64,000 nucleotides of DNA, taken from NCBI GenBank assembly GCA_044892505.1, contig CM097882.1:299584001-299648000 (forward strand), written 5' to 3'. This stretch comes from Schmidtea nova (lineage: Eukaryota). The notes under the pieces are model-generated. The model made no database searches. It had not been told where the DNA came from and saw nothing but the letters and a program-made list of their open reading frames with translations. Positions within the stretch are counted from its first letter, which is position 1. Every line of letters starts with the position of its first letter. Below are positions 8,293 to 37,188 of this stretch, piece by piece. The translations under genes and the position numbers were made by a program.

Positions 8293-8893
8293 TGTGGTGA
8301 TTCATGCATAGGCATCTGACCACACAGGTTGTATGTGTTCAATTGACATTTTGTGGTCGCCTATATTTTGTAATTTTTAAATGTAAAAATATTTGTGTAT
8401 TTTATATTTTTTATAAAAACTTTCAATTAATTTTTATGTTTGCTGTTTAAAAAAAAAAGCTTTTGTAAAGGTAAAAAAACAAATGAAACTTTGTTTAAAA
8501 AAAAAAGAATATAATGTATGGAAAAAATTTTGTTTAAAAGAAAAAATTTGGCGTTTTTTTAAAATAAACATTTACATCTTTAAATTTCTTTGTGATTTAT
8601 CTATTATTTTCGTTGATGAAATGAACGAAGTTATCCGACAGAAGATTAACGCTTATTTAACAGTATTTGATGAAATCTATAAAGATAATCTTCATAATCA
8701 TGTTTTGGAAATGATCGAGCAGCCCCTGCCTGCGAGAAATAGTGTTTTTGAGAGACTCGGCACTCTGGGGAAAGTCGTGACACCGCGGAGACTGATTAAC
8801 GGAGTAGAGAGTCAGAGGAACGGAGATTCCGCTCCTTTAACTATACCAACTGAGAAGCAAAAGCAGCAGATCCCGGACGTCGTAAACATTAAA
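8293..8893 (+). repeat. 5' LTR of gypsy element 1
   Basis: Differs from 14040-14641 by 3 substitutions and one A in a poly-A run. Confidence 0.93.
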
Positions 8894-10504
8894 ATGGTGT
8901 CAGAAGTGGCAGAAGATATTCTTGTTTCTACGTCTCTACATGCGCGAGACGAAGTCGTGCGACAGTCCGGACCACTGGAGACTCATACTCCTACCACTGC
9001 GGACGTCTGGGCCAGATTTGTCGATGTCCAGCATGTTTCTCTCGTGGCAAACTACGATCTCCTCACTATCCGAGAACTTTACTTTCAAGGTAACCACATT
9101 ATGTTAAATATTGTTCACCTTTTTAACTTGTGTGGTCTAGGCTTTTTGTGTGTTGTCGCCACATTAGCACCCTTACCTATTCCCTTATCTGGGGGGTCTA
9201 ATCTCAATACACATAAGGTACCTTGCACTGACATAATGGCAAATAATCAGGGCCATGCCGCCCTATGTGCTACTGAGGGTTTTGTTTTTGTCTCAACATC
9301 AGACAAGAACCGGATACTTCCCTTTAGTTTAAGCCTATCCTTTAAAGGACTTCTCAGTTACTTAAAATATGAGAAAAATGTTTACATAAATGACACGTAT
9401 GCTACATATAGGGGTTTTGTACATAGATTCGACGATCGACCCTTATATGAGCATATAAATGCTGGCGACACTATATATTTGCGGTACCGTATGCGCGGGG
9501 GCGCAGACAGTGACAATCCGTCTGTTTCAGACCAACCGCCTTCGCCTGGGACTACACAGCCAGACATCCCAACATCAATGCACAATTTGCCCAAGATTCC
9601 GTTCTTTTTGGATCAGAACGGATCTCCAGCATCCTGGTTTTTTGTACTGGAAAGACATTTTAGGATCATGACAATCACATCATCCTCCGAAATGTTCGAC
9701 CACTTGATCACCTGTTTGCAAAGGGAACTACTTTCGAAATTGGCTCATAATTTCTTGACCATTTCTACTTCTGCTGACCCGTACACAGCTCTTAAGAATC
9801 TAGTTCTCGAGAATTATCGCGAACCTAAGGCCGATATTTTCTCGCATTACTTCAAGGCACAGTCTCTCGGGTTACAACGTCCATCCGAATTCCTCAAAAG
9901 AGCCATTGATAACCTCGAATCCTTACAACAAGGTATCACTACCGACGACTCTCTGCTTCGTAGATTTTTTTTGTCGGCCTTGCCACCTCAGACACAGGCA
10001 ATATTGGCAGTTACGGAGTCAACCAACCTCCGGGATCTCGCCAATATGGCAGATAAAATCGCCAAAGCATCGGGCGTTAGCACGTCGCAACAGTGCAACC
10101 AAGTCAATTCGTTTGAGACTTTAGCCGCTGATACAGCCAGTTCAGCAAAGCGAAACATCCAGAGTTCAGATATAGTTTTGGCTGCAATTGAGCAGATATC
10201 TGATCGATTGAAGAAAATTGAGGCTCGGGATGAAAGACGGTCATCTCCGCACAGACGCACCTTTTCTCGTGAACGTTCTCTTCCCCGTCCTAAGAAGATT
10301 TGCTACTATCACGAAAGATTCGATAGAAAAGCTCAAAAATGCCACATAGGTTGCGAATATGCAGACAGGAGTTCAAGCTGTGAGCTTTTAGATGTCTGCG
10401 TCTATCATGGGAGATACAGGCAAGCAGCCAAATACTCTTTAGAAGGCTGCAGGTATTTCAAAAGTAATCCAGCACCGCAGAACAAGTCACATCCAAAAAA
10501 CTAG
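8483..10504 (+). CDS. gag: Extended Gag ORF: LTR-encoded leader + hydrophobic segment + ubiquitin-like domain + Mag-type Gag
   Basis: 673-aa ORF. PFFLDQNGSPASWFFVLERHF resembles the Mag Gag N-terminal motif, and there are two C-x2-H-x9-(C/Y)-x3/4-C motifs at the C terminus. Alternative in-frame ATGs at 8621, 9101 and 9236 (the last in good Kozak context). Confidence 0.85.
   Translation: MKLCLKKKEYNVWKKFCLKEKIWRFFKINIYIFKFLCDLSIIFVDEMNEVIRQKINAYLTVFDEIYKDNLHNHVLEMIEQPLPARNSVFERLGTLGKVVTPRRLINGVESQRNGDSAPLTIPTEKQKQQIPDVVNIKMVSEVAEDILVSTSLHARDEVVRQSGPLETHTPTTADVWARFVDVQHVSLVANYDLLTIRELYFQGNHIMLNIVHLFNLCGLGFLCVVATLAPLPIPLSGGSNLNTHKVPCTDIMANNQGHAALCATEGFVFVSTSDKNRILPFSLSLSFKGLLSYLKYEKNVYINDTYATYRGFVHRFDDRPLYEHINAGDTIYLRYRMRGGADSDNPSVSDQPPSPGTTQPDIPTSMHNLPKIPFFLDQNGSPASWFFVLERHFRIMTITSSSEMFDHLITCLQRELLSKLAHNFLTISTSADPYTALKNLVLENYREPKADIFSHYFKAQSLGLQRPSEFLKRAIDNLESLQQGITTDDSLLRRFFLSALPPQTQAILAVTESTNLRDLANMADKIAKASGVSTSQQCNQVNSFETLAADTASSAKRNIQSSDIVLAAIEQISDRLKKIEARDERRSSPHRRTFSRERSLPRPKKICYYHERFDRKAQKCHIGCEYADRSSSCELLDVCVYHGRYRQAAKYSLEGCRYFKSNPAPQNKSHPKN
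8895..8909 (+). promoter_or_regulatory. Primer binding site, tRNA-Leu type
   Basis: TGGTGTCAGAAGTGG is the reverse complement of CCACTTCTGACACCA, the 3' end of metazoan tRNA-Leu(CAG/CAA) plus CCA. It lies just after the 5' LTR. Confidence 0.85.
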
Positions 10505-34043: not shown

Positions 34044-36682
34044 CCTGACATCAAATTCTTACCCAATTATCAAATTTTTATGTGTTTTTTATTAAAATTT
34101 TGTAAATTCTATGAAGCAAGTAATAAGGTGAATTTTATATTTTATGCAATTAATTTGGTTAAGATATTAAATAAATTGAAACAAAACTGTCAGTTGCAAT
34201 TATGTTACAATTATTAATTTCTGAATTCATAATAATCAAATAAAAATAAAATTTTATTTCAAAATACAAATCATCATCAATCTGAAATATTCAAACAAAT
34301 TTTCAAAGTTTTTTATTTCAATATTATCAAATGTTATTAGATAAATGAAATTTTTTATGGTACTGGAGAGATCTGCCCGGCCAAGAGTACATAGATAACG
34401 CCTCATATTTATATTTTAAATAATATTTTTTTTAAATGAAATTGAATTTTATTATATGATATCTAATTTTTAATAAAAAATGGTGAAACCTTGACTCTTC
34501 AATAACAAATTTAACATTTATTTTTATTAGAAAATTGACATATTTTAACATTTTACTTTACTGAATAGAATATTAAAATATGTCAATTTTCTTGTAAAAA
34601 TAAATGTTAAATTTGTAATTTATTAATCACTTTTTTAAACATTTAAAACTCATTTATTTTCCTCCCTTAGGTTTAATATCTTTCACTATCTGACCAGGTG
34701 CAATTGGTTATAAATTATCCATATTGTCATATCGAATCCTTACTATAAAGAACTCTCAAACCCTCATTAATAATAACTCTCGAACTCTCATCGCTTTTTA
34801 AAACAAAGCTGTCATTGTTTTGAAATGTGATAGTTCAGTCTTGACTTCCCATAATTCATGTGTTGTTTTAGACATCAAAACCTGATAATACACAATGATA
34901 ATAAATGACAATAAACACGATAGTAAATAAAAATGGACTTGTATCCAAATCATTGCGACTCGCGGGTCCTAGTTTGCCTACCCTTGATATAACAGTTTAG
35001 AAATTATTAAATTTTCTTTAAAGGTAGATTTTATTTTTATAATAATATACTTATAATCATATTTATAATCTTCCTAGCTTTCATATCAATCATTAAAACA
35101 AATAAAAATAAAATATGCATATTAAGTACTTTTTCATTTCATTGTCTTTATTTCGTTTTCACATTTCATTAACTCTAAACATTTGGTGAAAAGCATTGCA
35201 AACATGTATTTTGGTATGGTCCAAAAATTGTCGGAGTCTATAGCACGCCAAAACACAGATTGTTAGCCCTTTATTTGAATGGTCGAAAGAAAGATGGTGA
35301 ACCTTAATAAGATTTCTTGTTAGATCTGTAACCTTCTAAAGAAGCGGTTGTTATTGAACAAATACACTTTTTGATCTATTTTTTCGTCACAAGGTTTAAT
35401 AAAAATAATTTGGATATTATTTTAAGACTTTTCTGACCTCTTATTGTTATCATATATGATAGATGAGTAAAGCAATTTTAGGTGAAACTAGAACCTTTAA
35501 GAACAAACTAAATTTTGTTATATTTCAAATATTATTATTAATTATTAATTATTTTCTTATAAACAGATTAAAATTATTATACATCTTAATTCCTTATATT
35601 TTCCACTTTATGAAACTCTCGGAATCTCCTTTTTTCGAAATCATCAGAATATGGAAAATGTGATTTTAAAGATATGAAATCATGGAATTTCAGAGAATTC
35701 AATTAATCTTAGCCCCTTCATAAAATGATTATTTATTAAATGTAGTGCATAATATCAAAAGTGACAGTTCACTATCAACATTTTATTTCTAAAAAGACTT
35801 GAAGAAAAAGAATTAGAAGAAATCGTTTGATTGATAATGAATAAAATCTGAATCAGATATGGGAATAATTTTCATTATTTTTTATGTCGAAATGGTAGGT
35901 TGTTTGATTGAAAGAATTAATTAGACAGAATAAATTTTGAGGGTTAATAACCATACAATTTTTATGGTATAGAAATGAACATTTATGTTACTGTAAAATT
36001 GTTGCATTTGTAAATAGACATAGAGTCGTAGAATAAATTCATCGAAAATAATATATTAACATTTTATATTTTTAGAGCCTTCGGGATAATTATTCAGTTC
36101 AGATAGGTGATCCTACAAATCAGTTTTATTTTAGAAATTGATGATAAAATATTTTCTTGATATTTATTTTCAACCGAATTTTTATAATTTAAAGGGAATT
36201 TTTAGGTATAATTTGTCCATTAGAATACATAAATATAACGGGAATCTTTTATTATAAATATATTATGTACTTATAGATGTATCAGTTAGAAATACTTAAT
36301 AAAATNNNNNNNNNNNNNNNNNNNNNNNNNNNNNNNNNNNNNNNNNNNNNNNNNNNNNNNNNNNNNNNNNNNNNNNNNNNNNNNNNNNNNNNNNNNNNNN
36401 NNNNNNNNNNNNNNNNNNNNNNNNNNNNNNNNNNNNNNNNNNNNNNNNNNNNNNNNNNNNNNNNNNNNNNNNNNNNNNNNNNNNNNNNNNNNNNNNNNNN
36501 NNNNNNNNNNNNNNNNNNNNNNNNNNNNNNNNNNNNNNNNNNNNNNNNNNNNNNNNNNNNNNNNNNNNNNNNNNNNNNNNNNNNNNNNNNNNNNNNNNNN
36601 NNNNNNNNNNNNNNNNNNNNNNNNNNNNNNNNNNNNNNNNNNNNNNNNNNNNTTTTTTTGTGATACCCAGTGCAAATCCCCA

Positions 36683-36724
36683 ATAGCAGACTAGTTTCGA
36701 GCTTTTGGCTCTCATCAGTGCTAT
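36683..36724 (-). ncRNA. Minimal type I hammerhead ribozyme (inverted copy)
   Basis: Exact reverse complement of 37147-37188. Confidence 0.85.
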
Positions 36725-37146
36725 GCAGGAGACGCGAAAATTTCTCTCCGCGCCAGGTAAGTATAAAACAAAGTCGAAAGATTTTGTTATATACTATACC
36801 TGGTACACTGGATAAAACATCACTTGAATATGCAAGGTCCTACAGATAATCTGTAACTTGCAAACATGGCGTATGAATTTCATTTTCGCCTCTGCGCACT
36901 AAAAGTGTTCAACAGAAACTGTTTGCAAGCGCACCCGACTGCCTTAGCTTCATTATTTCAATTTCTTGAAATATCTTTTGAAAAAAACATTTGTCGGTTT
37001 GCCATGTTTGCAAGTTACAGATTATCTGTAGGACCTTGCATATTCAAGTGATGTTTTATCCAGTGTACCAGGTATAGTATATAACAAAATCTTTCGACTT
37101 TGTTTTATACTTACCTGGCGCGGAGAGAAATTTTCGCGTCTCCTGC

Positions 37147-37188
37147 ATAGCACTGATGAGAGCCAAAAGCTCGAAACTAGTCTGCTAT
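37147..37188 (+). ncRNA. Minimal type I hammerhead ribozyme
   Basis: Stem I ATAGCA/TGCTAT, core CTGATGA, stem II GAGC-CAAAA-GCTC, GAAA, palindromic stem III ACTAGT, GTC cleavage triplet (cut after 37182). Confidence 0.88.

What the first reader, a model, noticed from the sequence alone, without database searches (positions are those of the whole stretch)
37107..37188. Hammerhead ribozyme element carrying the U1 snRNA 5'-end sequence
Seen in all three copies (37107-37120, 36751-36764 inverted, 59327-59341): ATACTTACCTGGCG, then a GGAGA...TCTCC hairpin, then a complete hammerhead 26 nt downstream of the 14-mer. Established: metazoan U1 starts AUACUUACCUGGC. The match runs beyond the splice-site-pairing bases, which favours U1 origin over a generic antisense donor. 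A specific 13-mer occurs about once per 6.7e7 random positions. The rest is not U1 (no stem-loop I loop, no Sm site). Inference: a chimeric U1-derived retrozyme whose self-cleaved monomer or circle could pair with pre-mRNA 5' splice sites, or a relic of capture from or insertion into U1 genes. I do not know of this combination being described.
Basis: partly seen in the sequence, partly recalled or inferred. Interest (0 to 1): 0.88.

Follow-up and report, generated by a model that had tools for sequence, protein, structure and literature searches.

The report
Hammerhead retrozyme carrying a U1 fragment
A ~380-base self-cleaving-ribozyme repeat with several thousand copies in this animal genome carries the first 17-19 bases of the host's own U1 splicing RNA, most likely an old captured fragment that is predicted to sit locked in a hairpin next to the ribozyme, not free to bind splice sites.

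Summary
All three window copies belong to a 377-382-nt repeat family: 3,687 exact copies of the 17-mer genome-wide, in tandem arrays, with head-to-head partial copies. Each unit carries a canonical metazoan type I hammerhead with a 2-bp helix III and a palindromic ACUAGU, the dimer-acting type.

The family consensus matches one U1 gene type of the host for 17 nt (ATACTTACCTGGCGCGG). An older subfamily matches a second U1 type at 18 of 19 nt. Nothing else in the unit resembles U1. The motif also occurs in hammerhead repeats of two other organisms in public runs, where the adjacent hairpin varies.

Origin from U1 is well supported. The proposed action is not. Folding puts the motif in a hairpin against an upstream 5'-splice-site-like arm. 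Exposing it costs about 17 kcal/mol, against about -15 for a perfect splice-site duplex. No RNA data were available.

Best reading: a non-LTR (Penelope-type) retrozyme with a captured U1 5' fragment that now works in cis. This is a new variant of a known kind. First readers flagged the same motif 11 times elsewhere in this genome. I found no published description.

The parts
36657..36997 (-). Near-complete repeat unit (unit positions 36-375) in inverted orientation. It forms a head-to-head pair with the next copy.
   Evidence: blastn against the unit, 93.9% identity; sequence read
36748..36764 (-). U1-like 17-mer ATACTTACCTGGCGCGG of the inverted copy
36683..36724 (-). Hammerhead of the inverted copy; C17 lies at 36689 on the minus strand
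   Evidence: mirror of 37147-37188; Rfam HH9 hit at 36667-36736, 24.1 bits
37001..37254 (+). 5'-truncated unit (positions 163-375) followed by the first 36 nt of the next unit. It runs into a masked N stretch, which was not filled.
37069..37082 (+). 5'-splice-site-like left arm CCAGGTATAGTATA, predicted to pair in cis with the U1-like motif (13 bp, one bulge)
   Evidence: circular and linear MFE folds
37107..37123 (+). U1-like 17-mer, identical to nt 1-17 of host U1 type 'a'
37119..37138 (+). Hairpin B, CGCGGAGA-GAAA-UUUUCGCG. It overlaps the last 5 nt of the U1-like motif.
   Evidence: kept in subfamily 2 with a GCAA loop
37147..37188 (+). Type I hammerhead: helix I of 6 bp, helix II of 4 bp, helix III of 2 bp plus a UA loop (palindrome ACUAGU). 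Predicted cleavage after 37182.
   Evidence: direct reading; Rfam HH9 alignment; architecture as described in PMC4209133
37190..37194 (+). GGGGA, predicted partner of UCUCC (37139-37143), extending helix I
59051..59455 (+). Third copy: one unit plus about 30 nt of terminal redundancy, about 6% diverged from the consensus. U1-like 14-mer at 59327-59340. Hammerhead at 59366-59407 with G10.1-to-A.

Best explanation
The three sites are copies of a non-coding, non-autonomous retroelement of the metazoan non-LTR retrozyme kind: 377-382-nt units in tandem. Each unit carries a dimer-type type I hammerhead, which would cut multimeric transcripts into unit-length RNAs that can circularise. The copies were probably made by a Penelope-like reverse transcriptase. 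Early in the history of this family a 17-20-nt piece of the 5' end of the host lineage's U1 snRNA was captured. The likeliest routes are template switching of the reverse transcriptase onto U1 RNA, or transcription of a master copy from within a U1 gene. The captured piece has since been kept as part of the conserved block that holds the ribozyme. In the RNA it is not a free U1-like end. Its first 12 nt form the 3' arm of a long hairpin against an upstream 5'-splice-site-like arm, and its last 5 nt open the next hairpin. So it most likely acts in cis, in folding of the ribozyme and 3' module or in recognition of that module by the reverse transcriptase. Shown: the family, its copy number, the hammerhead anatomy, the identity to host U1, and presence of the motif across subfamilies and in other organisms. 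Inferred: self-cleavage, circles, the capture mechanism, the cis role, and the Penelope-like partner.
For: Family: at least 2,599 first-look candidates. There are 3,687 exact 17-mers and 3,728 exact 35-mers of the hammerhead, in arrays with a 380-382-nt period and up to at least 60 units. 5' ends are variable, and many arrays stop at ...TTTTCAAAA next to (TAA)n-like DNA. Head-to-head partial copies are frequent. No frame stays open around the unit. Hammerhead: the full core, and a 6/4/2-bp helix layout with palindromic ACUAGU, which is the canonical metazoan dimer-type described in PMC4209133. U1 origin: host U1 type 'a' (RF00003, 111.8 bits) begins ATACTTACCTGGCGCGG, a 17/17 match to the consensus. 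The tandem U1 type 'b' begins ATACTTACCTGGCGTGAAG, an 18/19 match to the consensus of older subfamily 2. The 6 nt beyond the splice-site complement have a chance probability of 6e-6 at window composition and 2.4e-4 with uniform base frequencies. Persistence: subfamily 2 has 266 dispersed, decayed copies and keeps the motif, while its left arm differs. Contigs of two other organisms share only the block from motif through hammerhead to tail. They show no variant at 10% or more within the 14-mer, and their differences cluster in the adjacent hairpin. Sequestration: circular MFE -118 kcal/mol, z = -6.5, P(unpaired) about 0. Exposing nt 1-11 costs +17.4 kcal/mol, against -15.3 for a perfect 5' splice-site duplex. 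Both subfamilies keep the two-hairpin layout. Partner: Penelope-like elements are abundant, with 3,406 GIY-YIG candidates and an 854-aa ORF carrying RVT_1 plus GIY-YIG. A link between retrozymes and Penelope-like elements is proposed in bioRxiv 10.64898/2026.07.22.740005.
Against: There is no RNA evidence at all. The runs found are contigs, and none is on record as RNA. Structures are thermodynamic predictions only. The U1-like arm is invariant while its pairing partner drifts, which suggests a sequence-specific constraint beyond simple pairing. That would suit a partner such as U1 snRNA or splice sites. Organism D differs from the reference by only about 3.5% across the shared block, so its conservation carries little weight. 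No Penelope-like element sharing sequence or a hammerhead with the repeat was found in 33 loci. The hammerhead is below Rfam's gathering score.
Confidence: 0.55

Rival explanations
1. Trans-acting U1 mimic. The self-cleaved linear or circular RNA exposes the U1-like sequence and pairs with pre-mRNA 5' splice sites, competing with U1 snRNP or modulating splicing.
For: The complement to the 5' splice-site consensus is perfect (duplex -15.3 kcal/mol). The motif is invariant across subfamilies and in two other organisms while its cis partner drifts. Thousands of potential source loci exist.
Against: The motif is predicted fully paired; opening it costs about +17 kcal/mol, more than a splice-site duplex returns. 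It lies about 60-76 nt from the 3' end of the cleaved monomer, not at a 5' end. There is no Sm site and no U1 stem-loop to recruit U1 proteins. No transcript evidence exists.
Confidence: 0.1
2. The selected feature is on the opposite strand. CAG|GTAAGTAT there is a perfect 5' splice donor and U1 snRNP binding site. It would act in antisense or read-through transcripts, which the frequent inverted copies make common, for example to recruit U1 snRNP, suppress premature polyadenylation or drive splicing.
For: The antisense sequence is a perfect donor consensus in both subfamilies and one base short of it (AAAC for ATAC) in the organism C loose-end consensus. Head-to-head copies place both strands in one transcript. 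The invariant arm fits pairing to an invariant partner, U1 snRNA.
Against: This explains only 11 nt. The further 6-8 nt identical to host U1 would be chance, with p between 6e-6 and 2.4e-4. The ribozyme marks the other strand as the functional RNA strand. There are no RNA data. This reading does not exclude a U1 origin; it concerns only why the motif is kept.
Confidence: 0.12
3. A cis-regulated mini-intron, as in Drosophila virilis Penelope. The interval 37073-37150 (GU...AG, 78 nt) ends inside helix I of the hammerhead. The intronic U1-like arm would mask the donor, so that spliced and unspliced RNAs carry different ribozymes.
For: The geometry parallels the 75-nt Penelope intron, whose 3' end abuts helix I of the hammerhead (PMC4209133, PMC2377424). 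Subfamily 1 has CAG|GUAUAGU, a pyrimidine-rich stretch before UAG, and a CUUAC branch-like site 37 nt upstream.
Against: The older subfamily 2 reads CAG|GAAAAGU and organism C reads CAG|AAAGU. Both lack the GU, so the donor is not conserved. The listed joints do not include a skip over this interval; the table shows only the best supported, and the runs may be DNA.
Confidence: 0.08
4. A chance or convergent resemblance with no descent from U1.
For: An 11-nt complement to a splice site could evolve by selection alone. The genome holds many repeat families.
Against: The 17/17 and 18/19 identities are anchored exactly at nt 1 of two host U1 types. The expected number of 17-mer matches at random is about 4e-8 per 377-nt unit (my arithmetic: 2 x 377 / 4^17). 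The G+C-rich extension sits in a window that is 27% G+C.
Confidence: 0.03

Closest known systems
Metazoan non-LTR retrozymes (Cervera and de la Pena 2020, PMC7229834)
   Same: Tandem non-coding repeats of a few hundred nt, each with a type I hammerhead; species-specific sequence; thousands of copies. Units slightly longer than one monomer are consistent with circular or multimeric templates.
   Different: No U1 or snRNA segment is mentioned in that paper or its supplement. Circular RNA and expression are unshown here. This family also has one recurrent 3' end and frequent inverted partial copies.
Penelope-like elements and their pLTR hammerheads (PMC4209133; bioRxiv 10.64898/2026.07.22.740005)
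   Same: Dimer-type hammerhead with a tiny palindromic helix III; tandem and head-to-head arrangements; abundant RT plus GIY-YIG elements in the same genome; a splice-related feature directly upstream of helix I in D. virilis Penelope.
   Different: No sequence similarity between this repeat and 33 sampled Penelope-like loci, and no hammerhead detected in them. The unit has no ORF.
SINEU: SINEs with U1- or U2-derived heads (Kojima 2015, PMC4494074)
   Same: A mobile element that incorporated part of a U1 snRNA, with template switching as the proposed route. The snRNA piece brings no internal promoter.
   Different: SINEU elements carry long snRNA pieces at the 5' head, have poly(A) tails and occur in crocodilians. 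Here only 17-20 nt are kept, they are internal and paired in a hairpin, the element ends in ...TTTTCAAAA, and it carries a ribozyme.
U1 snRNA (Rfam RF00003)
   Same: Nucleotides 1-17 (or 1-19) are identical to the host's own genes, including the 5' splice-site recognition sequence.
   Different: No stem-loops I-IV and no Sm site. RF00003 gives no hit on the repeat at E up to 10. Residual similarity is no better than in shuffles, 83% of which score as high. No similarity to U1 upstream promoter regions.

Membership tests
Hammerhead ribozyme, type I (canonical metazoan form) | Conserved core: C3-U4-G5-A6-N7-G8-A9, G12-A13-A14, A15.1-U16.1, and cleavage after H17 | tested here: met
   Read directly at 37153-37182 and aligned to the HH9 consensus. 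The 35-mer is exact in 3,728 copies.
Hammerhead ribozyme, type I (canonical metazoan form) | Helix I open (6 bp), helix II of 4 bp, helix III of 1-2 bp with a small palindromic loop (dimer-acting) | tested here: met
   AUAGCA with UGCUAU, GAGC with GCUC, and AC-UA-GU, which together read ACUAGU. The description is from PMC4209133.
Hammerhead ribozyme, type I (canonical metazoan form) | Score at or above the Rfam gathering threshold | tested here: not met
   No hit at gathering thresholds. Best hit is HH9 at 24.1 bits against 52. This is expected for a helix III too short for the model.
Hammerhead ribozyme, type I (canonical metazoan form) | Self-cleavage activity | not testable with these tools
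   Needs in vitro transcription of monomer and dimer constructs.
Metazoan non-LTR retrozyme | Tandem repeats of about 170-400 nt, each with a type I hammerhead; non-coding | tested here: met
   Period of 380-382 nt, arrays from 1 to at least 60 units. No frame stays open around the unit.
Metazoan non-LTR retrozyme | Expressed as self-cleaved linear and circular RNAs | not testable with these tools
   Runs holding the repeat are contigs, and none is on record as RNA.
Non-autonomous derivative of a Penelope-like element | Sequence shared with the pLTR or tail of an autonomous element in the same genome | tested here: not met
   No blastn similarity and no hammerhead in 33 RT/GIY-YIG loci. The sample is small against 3,406 candidates.
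U1 snRNA | 5' splice-site recognition sequence at nt 1-11 | tested here: met
   17/17 identity with a host U1 gene.
U1 snRNA | Stem-loops I-IV, the AUUGCAC loop and an Sm site | tested here: not met
   No RF00003 hit at E up to 10. Local alignment finds only the 17-mer. The shuffle test gives p = 0.83.
SINEU-type snRNA-headed SINE | snRNA-derived segment at the 5' head and a poly(A) tail | tested here: not met
   The motif is internal to the unit. Arrays that stop at the recurrent 3' end finish in ...TTTTCAAAA with no poly(A).

The most novel reading that the evidence does not exclude
The retrozyme RNA is a natural U1 5'-end mimic. Thousands of loci would produce a stable, possibly circular RNA whose U1-identical 17-mer can switch between a cis duplex, itself a copy of the U1:5'-splice-site helix, and pairing in trans. 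That would let it titrate 5' splice sites, or with its 5'-splice-site-like arm titrate U1 snRNP, and so couple activity of a mobile element to host splicing.
Probability: 0.08. Interest if true: 0.85.

Novelty: new variant of a known kind. Interest (0 to 1): 0.5.

Why it matters
Animal retrozymes are abundant, and their small circular RNAs have no known function. Here one family carries an exact copy of the sequence the spliceosome uses to recognise introns, taken from the host's own U1. The copy has persisted through at least two subfamilies and occurs in repeats of other organisms. If it is only a captured fragment, it shows snRNA capture by a ribozyme-bearing, probably Penelope-mobilised element, extending what SINEU showed for LINE-mobilised SINEs. 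If the sequence is kept because of its complementarity to splice sites or to U1, it would provide a direct, testable link between self-cleaving repeat RNAs and splicing.

Tried and rejected
- **Rfam.** At gathering thresholds nothing was found in the window.
- **MIR6140 and MIR2599 hits**. These are artefacts of the long inverted repeat at 36828-37043, not microRNAs.
- **Rest of the unit against U1.** The only local alignment is the 17-mer. Residual similarity is no better than in shuffles, 83% of which score as high, so the apparent GATGAGA and ATTGCAC echoes were dropped.
- **U1 promoter capture.** Host U1 genes share a GAAAATG-like box near -70. The repeat has nothing similar upstream of the motif. 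The three T's before the motif also match U1 type 'a', giving 20/20, but three T's in a 27% G+C window are weak evidence.
- **Repeat copies near U1 genes.** None in ten 3-kb U1 loci.
- **Autonomous parent.** 33 Penelope-like loci share no sequence with the repeat and show no hammerhead by pattern or by Rfam.
- **Expression.** The single run search gave contigs only, none on record as RNA. The listed joints showed neither the candidate mini-intron nor clear circle junctions.
- **Decay of genomic copies.** The 17-mer count (3,687) against the 35-mer count (3,728) reflects CpG decay in dead copies and says nothing about selection.
- **Other hammerhead families in this genome.** The scan notes 572-nt and ~960-nt families.
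- **Literature.** No paper combines ACUUACCUG with hammerhead. U1 and snRNA are absent from the two retrozyme papers read.
- **Host organism.** It was not identified. It has three large chromosomes totalling 1.25 Gb, and a soil metagenome holds 83% of the repeat's sampled words.

Full report
**1. The observation.**
- The 14-mer ATACTTACCTGGCG occurs three times in the window: 37107 (+), 36751 (-) and 59327 (+). None of 100 dinucleotide-preserving shuffles gave three matches.
- In the first two copies the match extends to the 17-mer ATACTTACCTGGCGCGG. The third reads GGCGTGG.
- Twenty-six nt after the 14-mer lies a complete hammerhead core:
  - helix I: AUAGCA (37147-37152) with UGCUAU (37183-37188)
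  - CUGAUGA: 37153-37159
  - helix II: GAGC-CAAAA-GCUC, 37160-37172
  - GAAA, then AC-UA-GU
- Rfam finds nothing at gathering thresholds. A permissive scan gives HH9 at 24.1 bits against a gathering score of 52, E = 0.0013, on both copies.
- Helix III has 2 bp and a 2-nt loop, and ACUAGU is self-complementary. This is the canonical metazoan type I form, which works as a dimer between tandem copies (PMC4209133).
- Copy 3 has G10.1-to-A and is about 6% diverged from the consensus.

**2. The repeat family.**
- The window lies in a 1.25-Gb genome with three very large chromosomes.
- The unit, for example window 59058-59436, has at least 2,599 first-look candidates.
- The exact 17-mer occurs 3,687 times and a 35-nt hammerhead string 3,728 times. 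The reversed-pattern controls give none.
- Copies sit in tandem arrays with a 380-382-nt period, from one unit to at least 60.
- Arrays have variable 5' ends. Many stop at one recurrent 3' end...GTCATCCGACAAATG(T)nCAAAA, followed by (TAA)n-like DNA. Inverted partial copies are often attached head to head.
- The window's 36657-36997 (-) and 37001-37254 (+) pair is such a junction. The plus copy runs into a masked N stretch, which I left alone.
- Twenty-nine distinct monomers give a 377-nt consensus that contains the motif. No reading frame stays open around the unit.
- The MIR6140 and MIR2599 hits come from the inverted repeat and mean nothing.

**3. Comparison with the host's own U1.**
- RF00003 finds U1 genes in the genome at up to 111.8 bits.
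- Type 'a', in two clusters on C1, begins ATACTTACCTGGCGCGGTTTAACC. It is identical to the repeat consensus for 17 nt, or 20 nt counting three T's upstream of the gene.
- Type 'b', a tandem array with a ~2.5-kb period on C2, begins ATACTTACCTGGCGTGAAG.
- A second repeat subfamily came to light through a loose end in the read table. It has 266 dispersed copies that look far more decayed than subfamily 1.
  - Its consensus reads ATACTTACCTGGCGCGAAGAG. That is 18 of 19 against type 'b', and the one difference is at a CpG.
The data clearly do not meet it.
- The six bases beyond the splice-site complement, GCGCGG, have a chance probability of 6e-6 at the window's 27% G+C, or 2.4e-4 with uniform base frequencies.
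- Nothing else in the unit resembles U1:
  - no RF00003 hit at E up to 10
  - no further local alignment
  - residual similarity no better than in shuffles, 83% of which score as high
  - no resemblance to the upstream regions of U1 genes, which share a GAAAATG-like box near -70
- No repeat copy lies within the ten U1 loci fetched.

**4. Persistence of the motif.**
- Between the two subfamily consensus sequences, I count about three differences in about 115 nt across the block from the motif through the hammerhead to the ...ATCACAAAGC tail. The region just upstream, which pairs with the motif, differs at roughly a third of its positions (by eye).
- Contigs from public runs of two other coded organisms align only to that same block: about 1757-1855 and 1764-1877 of L004, where the motif is 1770-1786.
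  - They show no variant at 10% or more within the 14-mer.
  - Their differences cluster in the hairpin that follows, at 1785-1804.
  - Unaligned ends read ...TTTTATACTTACCTGGCGCGA in one organism and AAACTTACCTGGCGC in the other.
- One of these organisms differs by only about 3.5% across the block, so it adds little weight. The other is more divergent and more informative.
- All these runs are assembled contigs and none is on record as RNA. I therefore have no evidence on expression, RNA ends or circles.

**5. Predicted structure.**
- The consensus monomer, folded as a circle, gives -118 kcal/mol, z = -6.5 against shuffles.
- The U1-like 17-mer has P(unpaired) about 0.
  - Its nt 1-12, plus the preceding U, pair with CCAGGUAUAGUAUA 25 nt upstream: 13 bp with one bulge. 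That arm looks like a 5' splice site.
  - Its nt 13-17 start a second hairpin, CGCGGAGA with UUUUCGCG, closed by GAAA.
- Forcing nt 1-11 open costs +17.4 kcal/mol in ensemble free energy. A perfect CAGGUAAGUAU duplex returns -15.3, and ordinary donors return -9 to -13.
- Subfamily 2 keeps the same two-hairpin layout with a different left half.
- The left arm is not a conserved donor. It reads CAG|GAAAAGU in subfamily 2 and CAG|AAAGU in one of the other organisms.

**6. Mobilisation.**
- The genome is rich in Penelope-like elements: 3,406 GIY-YIG candidates, many in head-to-head or tandem pairs. An 854-aa ORF carries RVT_1 and a C-terminal GIY-YIG domain, and its Atlas neighbours are of the same kind.
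- Tandem plus inverted 5'-truncated copies are the usual look of such insertions. A 2026 preprint argues that animal retrozymes derive from the terminal repeats of Penelope-like elements.
- None of the 33 loci sampled shares sequence with the repeat or shows a hammerhead. The partner is therefore inferred, not shown.

**7. Interpretation.**
- *Origin.* Descent of the motif from U1 is well supported. The nearest precedent is SINEU, where U1 and U2 pieces were added to SINEs, probably by template switching (PMC4494074). The differences are large. Here the piece is short, internal and paired, and the carrier is a ribozyme repeat.
- *Present role.* I favour a cis role within the conserved ribozyme and 3' module. 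The motif is predicted to be sequestered, and the two-hairpin layout is kept in both subfamilies.
- *The weak point.* The motif stays invariant while its partner arm drifts. That hints at a sequence-specific constraint. It keeps three rivals alive:
  - a trans-acting U1 mimic
  - use of the perfect donor CAG|GTAAGTAT on the opposite strand
  - a Penelope-like mini-intron at 37073-37150, whose 3' end falls in helix I, as in D. virilis Penelope, but whose donor exists only in the young subfamily

**8. Novelty.**
- I found no paper linking hammerhead repeats or retrozymes with U1. The library searched is incomplete.
- First readers of this scan flagged the same motif at least 11 times elsewhere in this genome. 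Those are the same family, not independent support.
- I class the finding as a new variant of a known kind and score it moderately. The U1 capture is real and unusual. The exciting functional reading is unsupported and, on predicted thermodynamics, disfavoured.

Noticed in passing
L031-L039 (G000:C1 about 508.466-508.470 Mb and 510.992-510.999 Mb): Each canonical U1 gene (ATACTTACCTGG...) has, about 415 nt upstream on the same strand, a second U1-like gene. It scores 104-110 bits on RF00003 and starts AAACTTACTTGGTG, an altered splice-site recognition sequence. Both clusters are inverted duplications. A third variant, AAACTAACCTGGCG, lies on C2 (L035). These may be variant U1 snRNAs.
   Followed up: partly
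G000:C2 312.96-313.03 Mb and 314.00-314.03 Mb (L040): A tandem array of at least 30 U1 genes (type 'b', 86.6 bits) with a period of about 2.5 kb. Another AAACTTACTTGG-type sequence lies about 540 nt upstream of the copy examined.
   Followed up: no
L079 (G000:C1:338221000-338230999): A Penelope-like element with an 854-aa ORF (RVT_1 plus GIY-YIG) in head-to-head and tandem (3,136-nt period) arrangement. The family is very abundant (3,406 GIY-YIG candidates). No hammerhead was detected in it by Rfam at E up to 1.
   Followed up: partly
L013, L020, L027, L029 array ends; window 58800-59050 and 59437-59820: The repeat arrays, and the window's third copy, abut (TAA)n / (ATA)n microsatellite-like DNA. 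This suggests a target preference for such tracts.
   Followed up: partly
window 37073-37150: A 78-nt interval with GU...AG ends, a pyrimidine-rich stretch before the AG and a CUUAC branch-like site. It ends inside helix I of the hammerhead, the same geometry as the 75-nt intron of D. virilis Penelope. The GU is absent from the older subfamily.
   Followed up: partly
run X5: A soil metagenome holds 83% of the repeat's sampled 31-mers, so the host or a very close relative is present in soil samples. The host species was not identified.
   Followed up: no
window 8483-9502: Other first-reader notes on this window describe an LTR retrotransposon with a Gag fusion and a ubiquitin-like domain. I did not examine them.
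   Followed up: no
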